From Salpingoeca rosetta (lineage: Eukaryota > Protista > Choanoflagellata): a stretch of DNA of 64,000 nt. Made by a program: the position numbers and the translations under genes. Location: NCBI GenBank assembly GCA_033442325.1, contig JAWQFM010000003.1, positions 2,202,665-2,266,664 on the forward strand, read 5' to 3'. Under the pieces are notes generated by a model. That model was not told the DNA's origin and did no database searches. It worked only from the letters and a program-made list of their open reading frames with translations. Below, piece by piece: positions 23,449 to 32,109 of this stretch; position 1 is the first letter of the stretch; every line of letters starts with the position of its first letter.

Positions 23449-25720
23449 ATGGCTGATCACCAGCAGCAGCAGCAGCAACATATTCCCCAGGATTGGGAAA
23501 CCTGCAAGGAGAACTTCAAACCACGCCGCCAGGGCTACAGCGCAGAATCCGTCATGAACGCAGCCGTGGCAACACCATTCGAGAGGCTCGCAGAACAGGA
23601 ACGGTAAGGCATGCTCGTATGCGTGTGCGTGAACATGTGGTGGTGTGGACGGTGCTCGTCAGCAAATCTACTCGTGCATATGATGTGAGAAGCGCTATCT
23701 TGCACACACACACACACACACGCACGCACGCACGCACACACACACACACACACACACGCACACACACACACACACGCACACACACACACACCAACCCCCG
23801 CCACACCCCCTTAAAACCCATGCACAATCTGAACACCATGTTGACAGTGCCTTTGAAGAGGCTGTGTTCACGAGCGGCGGCAGCGACCCTCTCGACATCT
23901 GGAAGCGGTGAGACGAGCAGTGTGTTGTCGCGCATGATGTTTGTCTGCTGTCAAACAACCCACTGCCTCACAGCTTCGTATTCTTCTCACACTCGTTTTC
24001 CCATGTGATTACGTTCTCTTGTCCAATCATTTCACAGATACATTGCTTGGGCAGAAGAGCGCGAGAACAGCGCCGACTATCAGGTGTGTGCTCTCTCGGA
24101 GCAGCTGCAATACGGGCGGAGAAGCTGGCTTGCGTTCGTGCAACAGTGTCGCCTGCGTGGTTGTCGTTTGTGCGTATCGTGCTGCCCGTGCTCTAATCTA
24201 AGCATGCCCGCGCTTGAAGCTTGTTATTGCACTGGGGCGAGCAGTAACCCTCCTTTCATCTGTGCTCTCTGCGAACATAATTATTGCAGATTGACGTTGC
24301 TCGCCTCCTGGAGCGCTGCATCAAGCGTTTTGAGCGCGATGAAACCGTCAGGAACGATGAGCGCTTTCTCAAGATTTGCCTCAAATACGTACGTGCCCAT
24401 GAGCCATTGTACCTTGTACATGTGCGCACATGTCTGTGTGCGTACGGGCATGTGTGTGTATGAGAATGCCTGCGTCCGTTGAATAAAGGCAAGTGCACGT
24501 GCTCGTGTATTTCTACACCGCATCTCAATCCTGAATTGCCGTCGTGTCTCGTGCATGTTCAGGCGGACCGCTGCGACGAACCGTTTCAGATCTTCACCTT
24601 CCTGTTTGATCGCCGCATTGGCATCCAAACGCCTCTCTTCTGGCTGGTGAGGAGTGGTGCGCACGAAACTCTGCATGCCAAATTGTTTCACACAGGCATT
24701 GTTTTCGGAATCGCAAGCATGTGAAGTACTCGCATTCACACATGTACATACGTATTCACTTGCTTCTTCTCCACACACACACACACACTGCCGTCACTTG
24801 CACATTCACATACACACACACACACCAACGCACACACACACACACAGACGTGGTCGGTGATGTACGAGAGCATCAAGAACTACGATGAGGCCGTGGAGAA
24901 GCTTGAGCGAGGCATCATCACCATGACAGAGCCGGAACCCAAGACGTTTCTGCAGCGAAAGCTCACAGCACTGCAGCAGCGTGCGTCCTACCACCGTGAA
25001 AAGCAAGAGGCAGCCTCTCCCGTCGACAGCCCAGCTGCCAACGCTGATGAAGACAAGTGAGTGTGCGCATGCCGGGATGCAGACGTCTCAGTGTGCAATT
25101 GTTGTGATGTGCATTGTCCTTGAACTCGCAAGCCAGGTATACTCACGGTCACGTGTTTTCACTGCATCTGTTTGCGTGGTTGCTGTTGTGCACCGCAGGC
25201 GCATTACCTTTGGTGAGCTGCCACAGACGCGAAGTGGCCGTCTGCCCGTCAACCGTGGAAAGTTCGCACGCCAAGGGTACGCTGTGCATGTGACCGTGTT
25301 TCCGTTATTTCGTAATGCTGATGTGATTCTGCGTTTGCACTTGTTGTAGCGTGCGTGTGGGCGACTTTTCCTGCATGCACAGCAGCAATGCGCGGGCTCC
25401 ATCGCTCTCTTGTGCTCTCTCACACATGCGCTGCTGTTTTCTGTCTCCGTCCCTCCCCCTGCCTCCATCGCATGTGTTTACAGCGGGCGTGGTCTGAAGA
25501 ACGTTGTCAACGGCCGACCGGGTCTTGGTCTCGGTGCGCGCTCATCCGGGAACAACGGCGCCCTCAGCATTTACCAGGACTCTGCCGAGGACACGCAGGA
25601 GCGGTGTGTGTGTGTGTGTGTGTGTGTATGCGTGCGTGTGCGTGCGATTGTGTGAGGTGGGAGGAGACTGTGTGAGTGAGTGTGTGTGTGAATGCCTGTG
25701 ATTGGGGGAGGTGGGAGGGA

Positions 25721-25781
<61 letters not shown>

Positions 25782-28527
25782 AAATGAGATGATGTGAACT
25801 GAAAAAGTGTGAGCAGCAGAACAATGCTCGCCACATGTATTCACATGCCTTGCCTCACATTCCCCATTTCTTTGTAAAATGTCGCATTGTGAGCAGGCAC
25901 CGTCCGGTCGTGCTGCTCTCACGTCCTCAAATTCGCAGTTTCCCAGACGCCAGCGCCACCGCCAAGGAAAACTCACGGGTAAGGAGCTCAGCGCAGTCCT
26001 TGCTCTCCTGTACCTCCTACTGTGCTCATGTGTGCGTGTACGTCTGAAAATGCGCGCACGCGTGTGTGTGTGTGTGTGGTTTTGGAAACATGCTGACCTT
26101 GGTCACGCCCATTTCTTGCACCTCTTCCAACTTCCCATTCACCAGGACCCCTCGGGCTGGCACGGCACTGGTGGGCTGCGTACGCGACCAACAGCAGCCG
26201 CAACTGCTGAGCCCCTCGACGTGTATGAGGATGAAGATGTCAAGGCTACAACCGGCGACAAGTCGCCAGCGCCAAAACGTGCGTGTTGTCTGCGTTTGTG
26301 TGTGTCTGCGTTTGTGTGTGTGTGTGCGTGTGCGTGTGTGTGCGTGTGCGTGCGCGCGCGCGTGTGTGTGCATTTGTGCTTGTAGCCATGCGCGTGTGCC
26401 TCTGTCAGTGTGTGTGGAAATGTGTTTCGTGCTCACTGCTCATTGCACTCCTCCTGGCTGGCGGGCGTCCTTACAGTGCCGAAGGCATCCCGCAAGAAAG
26501 TGCTGCAGCCCAAGAAGCCGGCCGCGCCCGTTCGCATCTTCCACGACTATGCACGCGAGCGTGGGCTTGAGCGCGAGGTGTGTGTGTGCGCGCCTGCGTG
26601 TGCCTGTGGTTGTGGATGCCTGTGTATGTATGTGTGTCTATGCCTTGCAGCTTGTGCCAGTATTTGCGTCTCTGTCTCTGTTCACGGTTGCATTCTCCTC
26701 TGAATTATGTCTCATCCCTTCTACGCTCCCACGCGCGAGCGTGCACACACACACACACATACACACATACACACACACACATACCGCCACCACCACCACC
26801 ACCACCACCACCAGCTGCCTGGCCAGTACCTGATGTACGACCCACGGCCGCTGCTGGAGGATCCGGCAACCGAGTACTGCTTTGAAGAGATGCGCGCGTC
26901 GCACTGGCTCGCCGCCAACCATCTCACGGCAGACCACTTTCCAATCGAGGTGTGTGTGTGTGTGACTCTGTGTGTATCTGTGTGCGTGTGTGCATGTGTG
27001 AATCTGTGTGTATCTGTGTGCGTATGTGCATGTGTGTGTGTGTGTCTATTTGCCTACCTTCAGTCTGTCAGTCTGCCAGGCTGTCGTTGGTGGCTGTTTG
27101 TGCCCATCGCGTTCGATCATCACACGCTGCCCCAACTCTCTGCATTATCGCGAACGCATCGTTTTGTGACTTCCCTCAAATTGCACGCGCGTTTATCTTA
27201 CACGCCCCTTGTGTTGCAACAGCACGACTACGACAATGACCTCGACGTGTCGATGGGCGGTGATGAGTATGGCCAGAACCTCGACACCGAGGATCACCAA
27301 TACAGCGGCGACCATTCACACAAGCATATGCTGCCAACGCGGACTCCAGCCGCTGCCATGGTGAATGCACAAGGCGCCAACGACACACGTCAGGTGATGA
27401 TTGCATGCGAATTGCTCTGAGTTTGTGGTGTGTGTGTATGAGTGTGTGTGTGTGTGTGTGACACAGGTGTATGTGTGGTGTGAACGTTCTTGCCTCATGG
27501 ATACAATTGTGATTGGATGCAAGACGCCTTCACGCACGCCGCTTCATCGTGGTTGCACTGTACGTGCCGCCTTCACCTGTTGACTTTGATTGCTCCTTGC
27601 GTGTGGTTTAGGCTGATGCCGCATTTACAGCGCCAGAGGCAAACAGGCGTGAGCGCCGCGCACTGCGCGCTCTCCCCAATGCCGGCGAGGAGTCGGAGGT
27701 GAGATGTTCGTGCTTGCTACCGCCTGAAAGAACTGAAATGTGCGGCTTTCGGGTTGTGAACACGCTTGAAATTGACCCACTGTACGTCGCACACTCACAC
27801 ACACGTACACACACACACGCACACACACACACACTCTCTCTCTCTCACATATTCGCACATGCGCATAACAGCCGGAGAACACGGTGACCAAGCGGCTGCA
27901 TTTCAGTGTTCTTGACCATGAAGAACAAGAGGAGCAGCGTGACGAGGTGAGATGCAGTTGCATTGCATTCAAGTGTACTTGTACACGCCTTAACCCCTTC
28001 ACTTGTCACATTGCTTGCGGACGCTGTGATGTTCACGCTCACCGATCGCATCATTGCATGTACGCGCGCTATTGCTTGCGTGCCAGGCGCCATCGCCCAC
28101 AATCAACACCAAGGCAGCAATGGCTGACGTGATGGCCATGTTTGGTGAGTGTGCGTGCGTGTTTGTGGGTGTCGACACTGCATTGGATGCGAGCAACTTT
28201 GCTACAAGGCACTGTTGTATTGCCCACGACTGCAGGCATTTCAATCACTGCCCAACGTGCGCTCACATTCAACTGGGACGATTCTCTCTCTTGGTGTGTG
28301 TCAATGAAACAGGCGGCGCCCTCAACTCTCCTACAACAGAGAGCGGCAGTGCTGGTGTTTCGGCGGTGTCGCCTCGCCCATCACAGCCGCTGTCTGTGTT
28401 TCAGGACGTGAACACGAGTACAGGTGCACACGCCGATGATGAAGCAGAAGACGTGGACAGTGAGAACAAAGAAAACTGTGCTCCCCTCGAAGCAAAGAAG
28501 GTGTGTGCGTCAGTGTGTGTGAGAGTG

Positions 28528-28575
<48 letters not shown>

Positions 28576-30397
28576 TTGTTGGAGCTTGTTTGCACAAACT
28601 CAGAGTGGGGATGACATTGAACATGTCCACGCACTGATGTCCAGGTCTCATTTCCTAGCGCTCACAACCCAATGCTCTCTCCACACTTTCCTTTGCATTC
28701 GGTTCCCTCTGCCTCCACACAACAACACCGATGACAACACACAATGCAGCCCAAGATGAGTGCTGCACAAGAGGCATGCCAGCGCACCGGCCAGTCTCGC
28801 AGCGTGCTCGGTGAGCTGAAAGGCTTTGACCTGTGCAGCCCGGAAGAGCTTGCTGCTGCCCGCGCATACTCGGGTGATGACGACGATGGTGATGATGAGG
28901 ACGATGACCAGGGCAACGGTCGCAATCATGGCGACATTCACGGCTTCGGCAGCAACAAAATTGGCGGCAACAAACACTTGAGCGTCTTTGGTGGAAAAGG
29001 TGATGATGACGATGATGATGATGGTGGTGATGGCGAGAACAATGACGAGTACAACCACCATCGTGGTGCTGCAAAGCCCAACACACAACGCCGCCCGCTG
29101 GGAGAGCGCCAAATGCCGTCACTGCTGAACGACAGCCATGATGCGGACGAGCGTCATACAAGCAACGGCCCAGGCTTTGCACAACAACACCACCACCACC
29201 CGCACCGTGCAACCATGCTCAGCCCCATTCTGGAGGCTAGCCATGAGATTTCCTCCTCTGCGTCGTTCCTGTCAACCAGGAGCTCCAGGTGTGTGTGTGT
29301 GTGTATCCGTGAATGCTCGTTTGTTCGCCTTTGTCACTTCTGTGTTTACAATGCGTGAGCACATTGTTGTGGCTGAACTGTTTTCATTGTCATCCAACAA
29401 CTCACATCAAGTCTGCGCGTGTGTTCGCTGCTGATTTGCAGAACGCCCTCTGCCGCCGGCTCTGGTCCACAGTCCACGCTGACGACACCATCCGCAGAGT
29501 GCACCACGGTCACCGAGCTTGCCCGCGCACTCGCCAGCAAGGTGCACACATGCCTGCACATGCACTCTCGCGCTCATGCACATCGTTTCTGGTATATATT
29601 TTTTTTTCGCGCCTGCCTTGCCTGTTGAGTTTGATTTCAACAATGATACATCAAAGGGTTCGGGTGAGCACTACATACACCATGCTGCTGCGTTCACGCT
29701 CAATACTTTGTTATTGTGTATTTTACTGTTTGTTTCGACTGCGCTCAGTGCCAGGACGCGATTGAGGCCTCGTCCATGACAGTTGTGCAGCCAACAAATG
29801 TGCCAGCCCTCAAACCTGGTCAAGGTGCGATTGAACTAGAGTGCAAATTAGTGCTCCGCGAGAGAGACAGAGAGAGAGTGTGTGTGTGTGTGTGTGCGTG
29901 TGTGTGTGTGTGTGTGTTCTTCCGTTGTGCTCCCCGTCTCACTCGTGGTTCGCCTTGTCGCGGTTACTCATCATTGACACAACACGCATGTCTGCCTGCT
30001 GCCGTGACGCGCCCTCCCACAGTGCTGCAGAAGATCGTTCCTGACTGCACCCTGTCCGTGTGGCGTCAAAGTGACCCCCGTGCGTATCTTGCCGTTGAGT
30101 ACGCGATCGAGGACTATGACAGCTCAGACGTCGAGTACCTGCGTTGCTTCCAGCTCAAGGTGCGCACCAGTACACATACATGTTGTGTGTGTGTGTGTGT
30201 GCGTGGTTGTGACCAGATGTACAATATGACTTCAAGGAATGCGCATTCATTTGTTCTAATGTGATGCTGAGTTAAACACATGACCCATTTTTCTCTCTGC
30301 TGCCGTTGAACAGGTGGTGGAGCATCTCTATGAAGCGCGCATGTCGCTGCTTGTTCTGGATCGTCTGAAGCAGCTCGAAGACGTAAGCGGGCAGCGG

Positions 30398-30438
<41 letters not shown>

Positions 30439-32109
30439 TGTGTGTCAGGTGTGTGTGTGTGTGTGTGTGTGTCGGTTGTTTGTTCTTGTTGATTGTATGA
30501 CAGAGGCTTTTCGAGGTTGACTACGAGTGGCATCGGCGTCTTTTGCCTCCATTCCTCACGCGCACTCACAAACACAAACATGCATGCACGCACACACCCT
30601 CTGCTCCTTTTGCTGTTGTTGGCATGAACAGGCGCAGCTGCGTGCCCGTGCCATGGCGAGTGTGAGCGTGCCGGTTGCCTTCCACGTGTTTAACAACGGG
30701 CTTGTCATGTGCTCCACCTACTCAAGCAAGGCCAGTCTGGCAGACCTCGTTGCCTCCAACGCAGACAAGGGCGTGGCGTGTGACGAGACGCTTGTCATGT
30801 TCTATGCCATTGAGCTCCTGCGCACCATGGAGGCGCTGCACTCCTGCGGCTTTGTCGCAGGCAACTTCCAACGTGGGTGGTCTTGTGTCATGATGTGTGT
30901 GTGTGTTTGTGTGCTTGTGCTTGTGTGTGTATATGTGTGTTTGCTCTCTGTTTGCGAGTTTCTCCATGCGCGCGTGCATATGTACATGCGTGTGTTTGCT
31001 CTGAGAGCTTGCTTCTCTGTCTGTCTCTCTGTCTGTCTGTCTGTCTGTCTCGGTTTGTTTCACTCCGCAAGCATTGCTCCTGCAATCCACTTGTTGCCCA
31101 CGCGACTTGGCAAGCTCTTGTAACCAACTCACGTGCGTGGATGTGTGCTTGTTTCGCCTTCAGCCGAAAACATTCTCCTCCGCTGCGATCTCTTTGCTCT
31201 CGAGGCCGAAGAGGAGCAGGAGGCGACGGCACCCTGGAACGCACGGGGCGCCAACGGCTGGAAGCACTACGGTGTTGTGCTCACCAACTTTGCCCGCGCT
31301 GCGGACATGCAAGAGTTGCCCAGGCAGACGTTTGAGGACCACCAGCTGCTCGCAAGCCTTGGTCGCACCGCGGGCGCATTTGAGGTGATCGGCACGCATG
31401 ATGACTTGCATGTGTGTGTGTGCGTGTGCGCGTGTTAGCGTGTTACGTGTTAGTGTTGGTGTGTGTGTGTGTGTGTGTGTGTTTCAGTGCGTACTCGTGC
31501 TCGGAACCAAACACAGTTCCACTCCACGGACATGCCTCTCACAACCTCCACACGCACACACACACACACACACACACGCACACATACATACTCAACACGA
31601 TACAACACACCACAGCGGGATTATGTGGACGTGGCGGATGTGCTGCACCAACTGCTGTTTGGATCCGCCCTAGCTGTGGAGCAAGACGCAGACACGAGCC
31701 AATTCAAGCTGCAACAGCCCATCAAGTGCGTGCGCAATACGGCATTTTGTCTTGGCTCAACTTGGATGTGCTTGCTGCACATGCCACGCGTGGCACTCTG
31801 CCCGCTGGTGTTTGCTGTCTTGATTGTGATGTGCTGCGTTTCCTGCCGACTGATGGTGCACAGACCATTCTGCTCATTCTGCTCATTCTGCTCATTTGCT
31901 GTGTGTGTCGTGTTTGGATTGCTTACAGGCCGTATTGGCAACGCGAGTTGTGGCACAACATGTTCACGACGCTGCTGAACAACACCACAGGTTCATGCGA
32001 CCTGAGTTCTCTGCGCCGGGATTTCGAGGGCTACTTGGAGAGCAACAGCTACAAGAGCAGCTCGCTCCATGGCCTGCTCATCCGCCAAGACCTGCAGCTT
32101 TCTGACTGA
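23449..32109 (+). CDS. BUB1: MadBub spindle-checkpoint protein (BUB1/BUBR1/Mad3 family) with a degenerate C-terminal kinase domain
   Basis: KEN1 (WETCKENFKPRRQG); TPR (DPLDIWKRYIAWAE...LLERC...RNDERFLKICLKY); ABBA-KEN-ABBA (LSIYQD, AKENS, LDVYED); GLEBS (EYCFEEMRA); CD1 (PSPTINTKAAMADVMAMF); KARD (LSPILEAS); Bub1-type C-lobe (LVMFYAIELLRTMEALHSC...YWQRELWHNMFTTLLN). Stop TGA at 32107-32109. Confidence 0.92.

What the first reader, a model, noticed from the sequence alone, without database searches (positions are those of the whole stretch)
29990..32109. MadBub kinase domain is degenerate: a likely pseudokinase
Seen: after joining 30872/31164 the catalytic loop reads HSCGFVAGNFQPENILL (Bub1-type: IIHGDIKPDNF), so the His, catalytic Asp and Lys are replaced. 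The DFG/DLG position reads LTNFARAADM (31286-31294). No Gly-rich loop is evident and the activation segment is short, yet the C-lobe (LVMFYAIELL, YWQRELW...FTTLLN) is well preserved. Established: vertebrate BUBR1 is regarded as a pseudokinase and Mad3 proteins lost the domain, typically after gene duplication. Inference: an independent inactivation in a unicellular holozoan, implying a structural role for the domain and either a second active paralogue or another kinase for H2A phosphorylation and shugoshin recruitment.
Basis: partly seen in the sequence, partly recalled or inferred. Interest (0 to 1): 0.75.

Follow-up and report, generated by a model that had tools for sequence, protein, structure and literature searches.

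The report
Dead kinase domain in choanoflagellate MadBub
The only Bub1/BubR1-type checkpoint gene of the choanoflagellate Salpingoeca rosetta ends in a well-folded, conserved kinase domain that has lost the residues needed for catalysis, and at least two other choanoflagellates share the loss, so animals' closest relatives probably divide without Bub1 kinase activity.

Summary
Observation confirmed. The window holds the single MadBub gene of Salpingoeca rosetta (23449-32109, + strand). RNA from four studies supports all six kinase-domain exons and every junction, including 30872/31164, with no sequence differences.

The domain is Bub1-type by sequence (Drosophila BubR1 kinase E 7e-10) and by predicted fold (pLDDT 88; the top six PDB matches are BubR1/Bub1). 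HGD reads AGN, the catalytic-loop Lys is Gln, DFG reads NFA, and there is no Gly-rich loop. The beta3 Lys, alphaC Glu and loop Asn remain. By the standard definition it is a pseudokinase.

- **Not species-specific:** Monosiga brevicollis (HGS/ANF) and Salpingoeca infusionum (HGN/TDFS) also lack the catalytic Asp. Capsaspora and early animals keep HxD, DFG and GxGxxG.
- **Under constraint:** exon 3 against an uncultured close relative gives dN/dS 0.17.
- **No second Bub1:** no other TPR, kinase exon or Bub1 C-terminal signature exists in the 55 Mb assembly.
- **Substrate site:** S. rosetta H2A has no Ser/Thr at the T120 position.

The sequences are public and were filed as 'kinase' (NCBI name; Tromer 2016 supplement). 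I found no paper describing the inactivation. It is a new member of a known kind, the Bub-family pseudokinases. The domain's non-catalytic role is inferred.

The parts
23449..32109 (+). Whole MadBub gene (ATG to TGA): KEN1, TPR, KEN2, GLEBS, CMI, KARD and a C-terminal pseudokinase
   Evidence: tblastn of public protein P0001 on the window. Pfam Mad3_BUB1_I at residues 50-171, E 1.9e-34. Motif list of SROS_MADBUB in the Tromer 2016 supplement.
24296..24646 (+). Exons of the Mad3/BUB1 TPR domain, the only copy in the genome
   Evidence: the genome search PF08311 on the own genome: one locus only, G000:C3:2226960-2227310.
30023..30159 (+). Kinase exon 1: beta1-beta3. The Gly-rich-loop place reads RQSDPRAY (30064-30087, no Gly); beta3 Lys is retained (FQLK, AAG 30157-30159)
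   Evidence: Sequence; joints 29822/30021 and 30157/30312 in RNA; alignments.
30314..30382 (+). Kinase exon 2: alphaC helix (VVEHLYEARMSLLVLDRLKQLED); candidate alphaC Glu at 30332-30334
   Evidence: Sequence; RNA contigs run through it and reads end-join 30382 to 30632; the orthologous exon lies in the environmental relative L026.
30632..30872 (+). Kinase exon 3: beta4-alphaE and the start of the catalytic loop. HSCGFVAGNFQ, with AGN (30857-30865) in place of HGD and Gln (30869-30871) in place of Lys
   Evidence: Sequence; RNA joint 30872/31164 in 4 runs; only BUB1 chains hit in PDB; alignment to HGD/HAD; dN/dS 0.17 against L026.
31164..31384 (+). Kinase exon 4: rest of the catalytic loop (PENILL, Asn kept at 31169-31171), an acidic insert, the DFG place as NFA (31286-31294), and a short activation segment
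   Evidence: Sequence; RNA; alignments.
31616..31725 (+). Kinase exon 5: alphaF (RDYVDVADVLHQLLFG) and the following strands
   Evidence: RNA contigs; the Bub1 C-terminal profile A2 hits here.
31929..32109 (+). Kinase exon 6: Bub1-specific C-terminal helices (PYWQRELWHNMFTTLLN ... LRRDFEGYLESN ... LLIRQDL) and the stop codon
   Evidence: RNA joint 31725/31929; profile A2 hit at E 1.8e-15, the only locus in the genome.

Best explanation
The C-terminal domain of the single S. rosetta MadBub protein (residues about 860-1185) is a Bub1-fold pseudokinase. It keeps the bilobal kinase fold, the beta3 Lys-alphaC Glu pair, the catalytic-loop Asn and the Bub1-specific C-terminal helices. It has lost the catalytic base (HGD to AGN), the loop Lys (to Gln), the Mg-binding DFG Asp (to Asn) and the Gly-rich loop, so it should not transfer phosphate.

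The catalytic Asp and the Gly-rich loop were most likely lost in a common ancestor of at least the craspedid choanoflagellates S. infusionum, M. brevicollis and S. rosetta, after the split from animals. The DFG Asp decayed later (S. rosetta and M. brevicollis), and the His later still (S. rosetta and one close uncultured relative).

The domain is kept by purifying selection for a non-catalytic job. By analogy with vertebrate BUBR1, that job is most likely to stabilise the protein and support the adjacent KARD motif that recruits PP2A-B56. This last step is inferred, not shown.

S. rosetta has no second Bub1, and its H2A lacks the T120-type acceptor. The Bub1 to H2A-phosphate to shugoshin route is therefore probably absent or rewired in this species.
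For: - **Splicing and sequence:** fixed by RNA from four studies and identical to public protein P0001.
- **Family by sequence:** best PDB matches are Drosophila BubR1 kinase (E 7.4e-10), human BUB1 (3.5e-6) and human BUBR1 (1e-3). Pfam Pkinase scores only 19 bits against a cut-off of 31.7.
- **Family by fold:** AlphaFold model pLDDT 87.9, pTM 0.88. Foldseek ranks 1-6 are BubR1/Bub1 kinase (E 4e-17 to 2e-13, TM 0.72); the next kinase scores 3e-9.
- **Motif states:** read in HMMER and MAFFT alignments.
- **Relatives:** M. brevicollis XP_001745123 has HGSLQPSN/ANF; S. infusionum (EukProt) has HGNLNGDS/TDFS; an environmental fragment at 76% identity has AGN.
- **Outgroups:** active-type, e.g. Capsaspora GEGIYG, HADIKPDN, IDFG (Tromer 2016 supplement).
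- **Constraint:** exon 3 against genomic contig L026, 79 codons, dN 0.156, dS 0.91, ratio 0.17, with the same intron positions.
- **Single gene:** PF08311 has one locus. Exon 3 matches only itself at E<=10. The Bub1 C-terminal profile A2 hits only this locus. For the active-type profile A3 the best hits are this locus, and the next is an AGC/Greatwall-like kinase.
- **H2A tail:** LIPKGKGGKKAASQSQEY in both genes.
- **KARD:** present just upstream (SROS KARD 781-802). The role of the BUBR1 pseudokinase in KARD/PP2A-B56 function is from bioRxiv 10.1101/733378.
Against: - No biochemical test exists. HER3 lacks the catalytic Asp yet has weak activity (my own knowledge), and beta3 Lys, alphaC Glu and the loop Asn are kept here, so nucleotide binding or trace activity is not excluded.
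- M. brevicollis and the acanthoecid Stephanoeca keep a Ser/Thr at the H2A T120 place. The H2A loss therefore does not track the kinase loss across choanoflagellates.
- The kinase tree is poorly resolved, with long branches. It neither shows nor rules out a single origin.
- Only three named choanoflagellates were reached, and none was an acanthoecid.
- The KARD/PP2A scaffold role is an analogy only.
Confidence: 0.82

Rival explanations
1. It is an atypical but active kinase that uses other residues for catalysis, as WNK uses a displaced Lys and HER3 keeps weak activity without the catalytic Asp.
For: Beta3 Lys (FQLK), alphaC Glu (LYEARM) and the catalytic-loop Asn (PEN) are retained. The fold is predicted with confidence in a compact kinase shape. 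The domain is under purifying selection.
Against: Four separate catalytic elements are missing together: the Gly-rich loop, the HxD Asp, the loop Lys and the DFG Asp. The residue at the catalytic-base place differs among choanoflagellates (N, S, N; also G, K and A in environmental relatives). That variation is not expected of a re-invented active site. Pfam Pkinase falls below its threshold.
Confidence: 0.07
2. The domain is decaying neutrally: a relic on its way to being lost, as in Mad3, with no function of its own.
For: Kinase domains were lost outright many times in MadBub history (Tromer 2016). The choanoflagellate branches in the tree are long.
Against: dN/dS is 0.17 over exon 3 against a relative with dS about 0.9. 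Many invariant C-lobe and C-terminal residues are shared by three choanoflagellates that are only about 33% identical overall. There are no frameshifts or stops, all six exons are spliced and expressed, and the fold prediction is high-confidence.
Confidence: 0.05
3. An active Bub1 paralogue exists but lies in an unassembled part of the genome or is too divergent for the searches, so the organism still has Bub1 kinase activity.
For: Six-frame exon-by-exon searches score only the best candidates. The tool states that no match does not prove absence.
Against: Four independent probes found only this locus: the TPR Pfam model, exon 3, a Bub1-specific C-terminal profile and an active-type kinase profile. 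The assembly is 55.4 Mb in 68 contigs. Tromer 2016 and van Hooff 2017 each list one MadBub for S. rosetta and one for M. brevicollis.
Confidence: 0.04
4. The degenerate motifs are an artefact of wrong splicing or assembly error.
For: None was found.
Against: All junctions are seen in raw RNA reads and in contigs of three further studies, with zero mismatches in the exons. The orthologous exon of an independent environmental genome also reads AGN and has the same exon end.
Confidence: 0.01

Closest known systems
Vertebrate BUBR1 (BUB1B) pseudokinase domain
   Same: A C-terminal Bub1-fold domain in a KEN-box, TPR, GLEBS and KARD-bearing checkpoint protein. It has a degenerate Gly-rich loop, is catalytically silent, and is kept for non-catalytic reasons (stability, KARD/PP2A-B56 support). 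Some vertebrate BUBR1s also read HGN at the catalytic base (anole, gar).
   Different: BUBR1 arose after a gene duplication that left an active BUB1 paralogue, and human BUBR1 keeps the catalytic triad. Here the gene is unduplicated, two of the three triad residues are gone, and the same protein also carries the Bub1-type CMI motif (NCBI name; motifs).
Kinetoplastid KKT14 (divergent Bub1/BubR1 pseudokinase; PMC11286163)
   Same: A lone Bub1-like protein whose C-terminal domain has a Bub1-type fold but lacks key catalytic residues, in an organism with no active Bub1.
   Different: KKT14 is so divergent that sequence searches miss it. It lacks the TPR domain and the beta3 Lys, and its DFG reads HWE/CWD. 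The choanoflagellate protein is a plainly recognisable MadBub that keeps the beta3 Lys.
Active Bub1 kinase (human BUB1, yeast Bub1, Capsaspora MadBub)
   Same: Same fold, same C-terminal extension and the same domain order. Closest PDB structures by fold are human BUB1 at TM 0.72-0.73.
   Different: The active enzymes have GxGxxG, HGD/HAD-IKPDN and D[FL]G and phosphorylate H2A T120/S121. The S. rosetta domain has none of these three motifs, and its H2A lacks the acceptor.
Mad3 (yeast, plants, nematodes): MadBub paralogues without any kinase domain
   Same: A checkpoint protein that works without Bub1-type catalysis.
   Different: Mad3 lost the whole domain and coexists with a kinase-bearing Bub1. 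Here the domain is kept intact as a fold, and there is no partner paralogue.

Membership tests
MadBub (Bub1/BubR1/Mad3) family | N-terminal Mad3/BUB1 homology region 1 (TPR) | tested here: met
   Pfam PF08311 E 1.9e-34, residues 50-171 of P0001; genome locus.
MadBub (Bub1/BubR1/Mad3) family | KEN box(es) and a GLEBS (Bub3-binding) motif | tested here: met
   WETCKENFKPRRQG and EYCFEEMRASHW are read in the translation. Both are listed as SROS KEN1, KEN2 and GLEBS in the Tromer 2016 supplement. Bub3 binding itself was not tested.
MadBub (Bub1/BubR1/Mad3) family | C-terminal domain of the Bub1 kinase fold with the Bub1-specific C-terminal helices | tested here: met
   PDB sequence search; Foldseek ranks 1-6 are BubR1/Bub1; profile A2.
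Catalytically active protein kinase (Bub1 type) | Gly-rich loop GxGxxG | tested here: not met
   The beta1-beta2 turn reads RQSDPRAY; active relatives read GxGxFA.
Catalytically active protein kinase (Bub1 type) | Beta3 Lys and alphaC Glu | tested here: met
   FQLK and LYEARM align to ALK and WEFY of active Bub1s. The salt bridge itself was not examined.
Catalytically active protein kinase (Bub1 type) | Catalytic-loop Asp (HxD) and Lys (HGDIKPDN) | tested here: not met
   AGNFQPEN: Asp to Asn, Lys to Gln, His to Ala. Only the final Asn is kept.
Catalytically active protein kinase (Bub1 type) | DFG/DLG Asp | tested here: not met
   NFA at 31286-31294 aligns to DFG/DLG.
Catalytically active protein kinase (Bub1 type) | Measured phosphotransfer | not testable with these tools
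   Needs a recombinant protein assay.
Pseudokinase (Manning definition: kinase fold lacking at least one of beta3 Lys, HRD Asp, DFG Asp) | Kinase fold plus loss of at least one of the three residues | tested here: met
   Fold. Two of the three residues are replaced.
Vertebrate-type BUBR1 pseudokinase | Origin by duplication with an active BUB1 paralogue retained | tested here: not met
   Single MadBub locus and no second Bub1-like kinase.
Vertebrate-type BUBR1 pseudokinase | KARD motif next to the pseudokinase, recruiting PP2A-B56 | tested here: inconclusive
   The motif LSPILEASHE is present at residues 781-802. B56 binding was not tested.

The most novel reading that the evidence does not exclude
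Choanoflagellates as a group run mitosis with no Bub1 kinase activity at all. Their unduplicated MadBub became a BUBR1-like scaffold (KEN, KARD/PP2A and a dead kinase) without any gene duplication.

Other unduplicated protist MadBubs also lack the catalytic Asp: Dictyostelium HGN, Naegleria HNN/NFS, Thecamonas, and a chytrid. Together these would show that the non-catalytic role of the domain is its older, more indispensable function. Bub1 to H2A to shugoshin signalling would then be dispensable and repeatedly dismantled.
Probability: 0.3. Interest if true: 0.7.

Novelty: new member of a known kind. Interest (0 to 1): 0.55.

Why it matters
Bub1 kinase marks centromeres (H2A-T120 phosphate, then shugoshin and the chromosomal passenger complex). 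The field's picture is that a MadBub gene either keeps an active kinase or, after duplication, one copy loses or silences it. Here the sister group of animals holds an unduplicated MadBub whose kinase is dead yet conserved. This is a natural separation-of-function allele.

It bears on an open question stated in PMC10155811: how the ancestral MadBub kept or separated kinase and phosphatase activities. S. rosetta can be edited with CRISPR (my own knowledge), so the non-catalytic role of the domain can be tested in a one-gene system without paralogue compensation.

It also corrects database labels: 'BUB protein kinase' in NCBI and 'kinase' in the Tromer 2016 feature file.

Tried and rejected
- **Single exons:** exon-by-exon Pfam and PDB searches were too short to be significant. 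Exon 3 hit only BUB1 chains, at E 0.56. Exon 6 gave a chance hit to a bacteriocin immunity protein, which I disregard.
- **Word-based homologue searches:** the kinase region of P0001 and a three-species alignment returned almost nothing, swamped by low-complexity words. A full survey of choanoflagellate transcriptomes was therefore not possible.
- **Shugoshin co-loss marker:** rejected. No Pfam Shugoshin_C hit and only chance-level Shugoshin_N hits turned up. The van Hooff 2017 Sgo set lacks S. rosetta and M. brevicollis, but it also lacks Capsaspora, Nematostella, Trichoplax, Amphimedon, Dictyostelium and Thecamonas, so its absence discriminates nothing.
- **H2A T120 loss as a clade-wide correlate:** rejected. 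S. rosetta and Choanoeca lack the residue; M. brevicollis and Stephanoeca keep it.
- **Kinase tree:** too poorly resolved to count the origins of the loss.
- **DNA search of the region in the genome:** found only (TG)n microsatellites.
- **Papers not held:** Suijkerbuijk 2012 and Kwon 2019 could not be read, so I cannot exclude that one of them mentions the choanoflagellate case.
- **Joined model:** The joined protein used after one search is the public record P0001 returned by the search.
Full report
**What is there.** The window is G000:C3:2202665-2266664 of a 55.4 Mb, 68-contig assembly. I confirmed this: the protein encoded here is the NCBI/UniProt entry 'BUB protein kinase [Salpingoeca rosetta]', 1185 aa (P0001). 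The gene runs from the ATG at 23449 to the TGA at 32107-32109 on the + strand.

P0001 carries the Mad3/BUB1 TPR domain (Pfam E 1.9e-34). It also has the KEN1, KEN2, GLEBS, CMI and KARD motifs listed for SROS_MADBUB in the supplement of Tromer et al. 2016 (PMC5204127).

**Checking the observation.** I read the sequence and phased six exons:
- E1 30023-30159
- E2 30314-30382
- E3 30632-30872
- E4 31164-31384
- E5 31616-31725
- E6 31929-32109

The joined sequence used later is the public record P0001, which the representative search returned.

- GT..AG joints appear at 29822/30021, 30157/30312, 30872/31164 and 31725/31929.
- Contigs of 4201 and 2639 letters pass without a break through 30382/30632 and 31383/31615.
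- No base differences or indels were reported in any kinase exon.
- First mates lie on the minus strand, as expected for a + strand mRNA in a stranded library.

The only correction is that 29990 lies in an intron.

**What the domain is.** P0001:860-1185 finds Drosophila BubR1 kinase (6jkk, E 7.4e-10), human BUB1 kinase (3.5e-6) and human BUBR1 (1e-3) ahead of all other kinases in the PDB. The general Pfam Pkinase model reaches only 19 bits against a cut-off of 31.7.

An AlphaFold2 model built on a 26-sequence alignment is confident (pLDDT 87.9, pTM 0.88). Its six best Foldseek matches in the PDB are BubR1 and Bub1 kinase domains (E 4e-17 to 2e-13, TM 0.72-0.73). The next kinase stands at 3e-9. 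It is a Bub1-fold domain.

**State of the catalytic machinery.**

| Element | Active Bub1 | S. rosetta | State |
|---|---|---|---|
| Gly-rich loop | GxGxFA | RQSDPRAY | lost |
| Beta3 Lys | ALK | FQLK | kept |
| AlphaC Glu | WEFY | LYEARM | kept |
| HxD | HGD/HAD | AGN | His and Asp lost |
| Loop Lys | IKPDN | FQPEN | Lys lost, Asn kept |
| DFG | DFG/DLG | NFA | Asp and Gly lost |

The activation segment is about seven residues shorter than in human BUB1. Two of the three residues that define an active kinase are gone, so the domain meets the usual definition of a pseudokinase. Catalysis itself cannot be tested here.

**How old the loss is.** A HMMER scan of 1.84 billion representatives with exon 3, with source look-ups, gave these relatives:

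| Protein | Source | Catalytic loop | DFG place |
|---|---|---|---|
| P0006 | Monosiga brevicollis XP_001745123 | HGSLQPSN | ANF |
| P0007 | Salpingoeca infusionum (EukProt) | HGNLNGDS | TDFS |
| P0002 | environmental fragment, 76% identical | AGN | not covered |
| P0003, P0005, P0013, P0017, P0026, P0028 | uncultured | HGN, HCG, HGK or HMA | varies |

None of the three named choanoflagellates has a Gly-rich loop.

In the Tromer 2016 feature file, Capsaspora (GEGIYG, HADIKPDN, IDFG), Trichoplax, Nematostella, sea urchin and others are of the active type. The simplest reading is stepwise decay. The catalytic Asp and Gly-rich loop were lost after the split from animals, in an ancestor of these three craspedids. 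The DFG Asp was lost later, and the His only in the S. rosetta lineage. The position of S. infusionum outside the S. rosetta/Monosiga group is from my memory of published trees.

The kinase-domain tree I built is too poorly resolved, and its branches too long, to count events. No acanthoecid sequence was reached.

**Is it still doing something?** A 691-bp environmental genomic contig (L026, ENA ERZ27287572) carries the orthologous exons 2 and 3 with the same intron positions. Over 79 codons of exon 3, amino-acid identity is 75%, dN is 0.156 and dS is 0.91, giving a ratio of 0.17. The AGN is conserved.

Three choanoflagellate proteins that are only about 33% identical overall share many invariant residues in the C-lobe and the C-terminal helices. 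With the intact reading frame, expression and confident fold, this argues for purifying selection on a non-catalytic function.

Which function is inferred only. In vertebrate BUBR1 the pseudokinase stabilises the protein and is needed in cis for KARD phosphorylation and PP2A-B56 recruitment (bioRxiv 10.1101/733378). S. rosetta MadBub has a KARD motif (LSPILEASHE, residues 781-802) just upstream.

**Is there another Bub1?** Four probes of the whole assembly found only this locus:
- the TPR Pfam model;
- exon 3 at E<=10;
- a profile of the Bub1-specific C-terminal region from 21 sequences;
- a profile built only from active-type Bub1 kinase domains, whose three best exon hits are this locus. The next hit is an AGC/Greatwall-like kinase with HRDLKPDN and DFG and a Ser-rich insert.

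**The H2A-shugoshin axis.** Both canonical S. rosetta H2A genes end ...GGVLPHIHSNLIPKGKGGKKAASQSQEY, with Gly/Lys where most eukaryotes have LLPKK[S/T]. The best-known Bub1 substrate site is thus absent in this species.

This does not track the kinase loss across the group. Choanoeca also lacks the residue, while M. brevicollis (LLPKKSSS) and Stephanoeca (LLPKKTGK) keep it.

Shugoshin motifs were not detected, and S. rosetta and M. brevicollis are absent from van Hooff's Sgo set. So are Capsaspora, Nematostella and Trichoplax, so this says nothing.

**What is known.** Bub-family pseudokinases are established: vertebrate BUBR1 and kinetoplastid KKT14 (PMC11286163). The S. rosetta and M. brevicollis sequences are public. 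In Tromer 2016 they are tagged 'kinase', while vertebrate BUBR1s are tagged 'pseudo_kinase'.

Full-text searches for MadBub, pseudokinase and choanoflagellate found no description of this inactivation. Suijkerbuijk 2012 and Kwon 2019 were not available.

Several other protist entries in the same file also lack the catalytic Asp: Dictyostelium HGN, Polysphondylium HAN, Naegleria HNN/NFS, Thecamonas and Plasmodiophora. So does a chytrid (P0012). Silent conversion of unduplicated MadBub kinases may therefore be recurrent.

**Verdict.** The inactivation is independent of vertebrates but shared among choanoflagellates. I found no second paralogue. The scaffold role is inferred. It is a new member of a known kind, of moderate interest, and directly testable in a tractable organism.

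Noticed in passing
L023:1477-1875 (- strand) and L024; not in the window: Both canonical H2A genes of S. rosetta (H2A.X-type, ending SQEY) lack a Ser/Thr at the place of human T120 / yeast S121 (LIPKGKGGKK instead of LLPKK[ST]). Choanoeca perplexa and C. flexa H2A also lack it; Monosiga brevicollis and Stephanoeca diplocostata keep it. A natural H2A variant lacking the Bub1 site is described in Candida albicans (PMC6613695, seen).
   Followed up: partly
Tromer 2016 supplementary file 3; P0012: Other unduplicated protist MadBub/Bub entries labelled 'kinase' also lack the catalytic Asp: Dictyostelium HGNICANN, Polysphondylium HANISPQN with GGF, Naegleria HNNISPSN with TNFS, Thecamonas HTHIATDK, and Plasmodiophora HRAIQPRH. 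So does the chytrid Chytriomyces sp. MP71 (HGN/TGF).
   Followed up: no
L026:1-691 (ENA ERZ27287572): This environmental genomic contig comes from an uncultured close relative of S. rosetta. It holds MadBub exons 2 and 3 with identical intron positions and 77% nucleotide identity in exon 3.
   Followed up: partly
window 28144-28311, base 28163: Inside an intron of the MadBub gene, every RNA read and contig of three runs shows G where the assembly has T (28163). Reads lie on both strands there, with odd joints to 29289/29306 through (GT)n. This may be a strain difference plus microsatellite mis-joins, or a small separate transcript.
   Followed up: no
window 29880-29920, 30185-30205, 30395-30470, 30890-30940, 31420-31480, 31550-31580: Nearly every intron of the gene holds (TG)n/(CA)n microsatellites. 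The same repeats account for all 236+ other DNA matches of this region in the genome.
   Followed up: no
L016:1351-2400 (G000:C1:2409861-2410199): An AGC kinase resembling Greatwall/MAST (HRDLKPDN, DFG) has a very long poly-Ser insert after the DFG motif. It was the best non-MadBub hit of the Bub1 kinase profile.
   Followed up: partly
window 31200-31225 (protein residues about 1026-1035): An acidic insert (LEAEEEQEATAPW) lies between the catalytic loop and the DFG place, where fungal and choanoflagellate relatives have a conserved W..Y.P.G..GW element. Its role is unknown.
   Followed up: no
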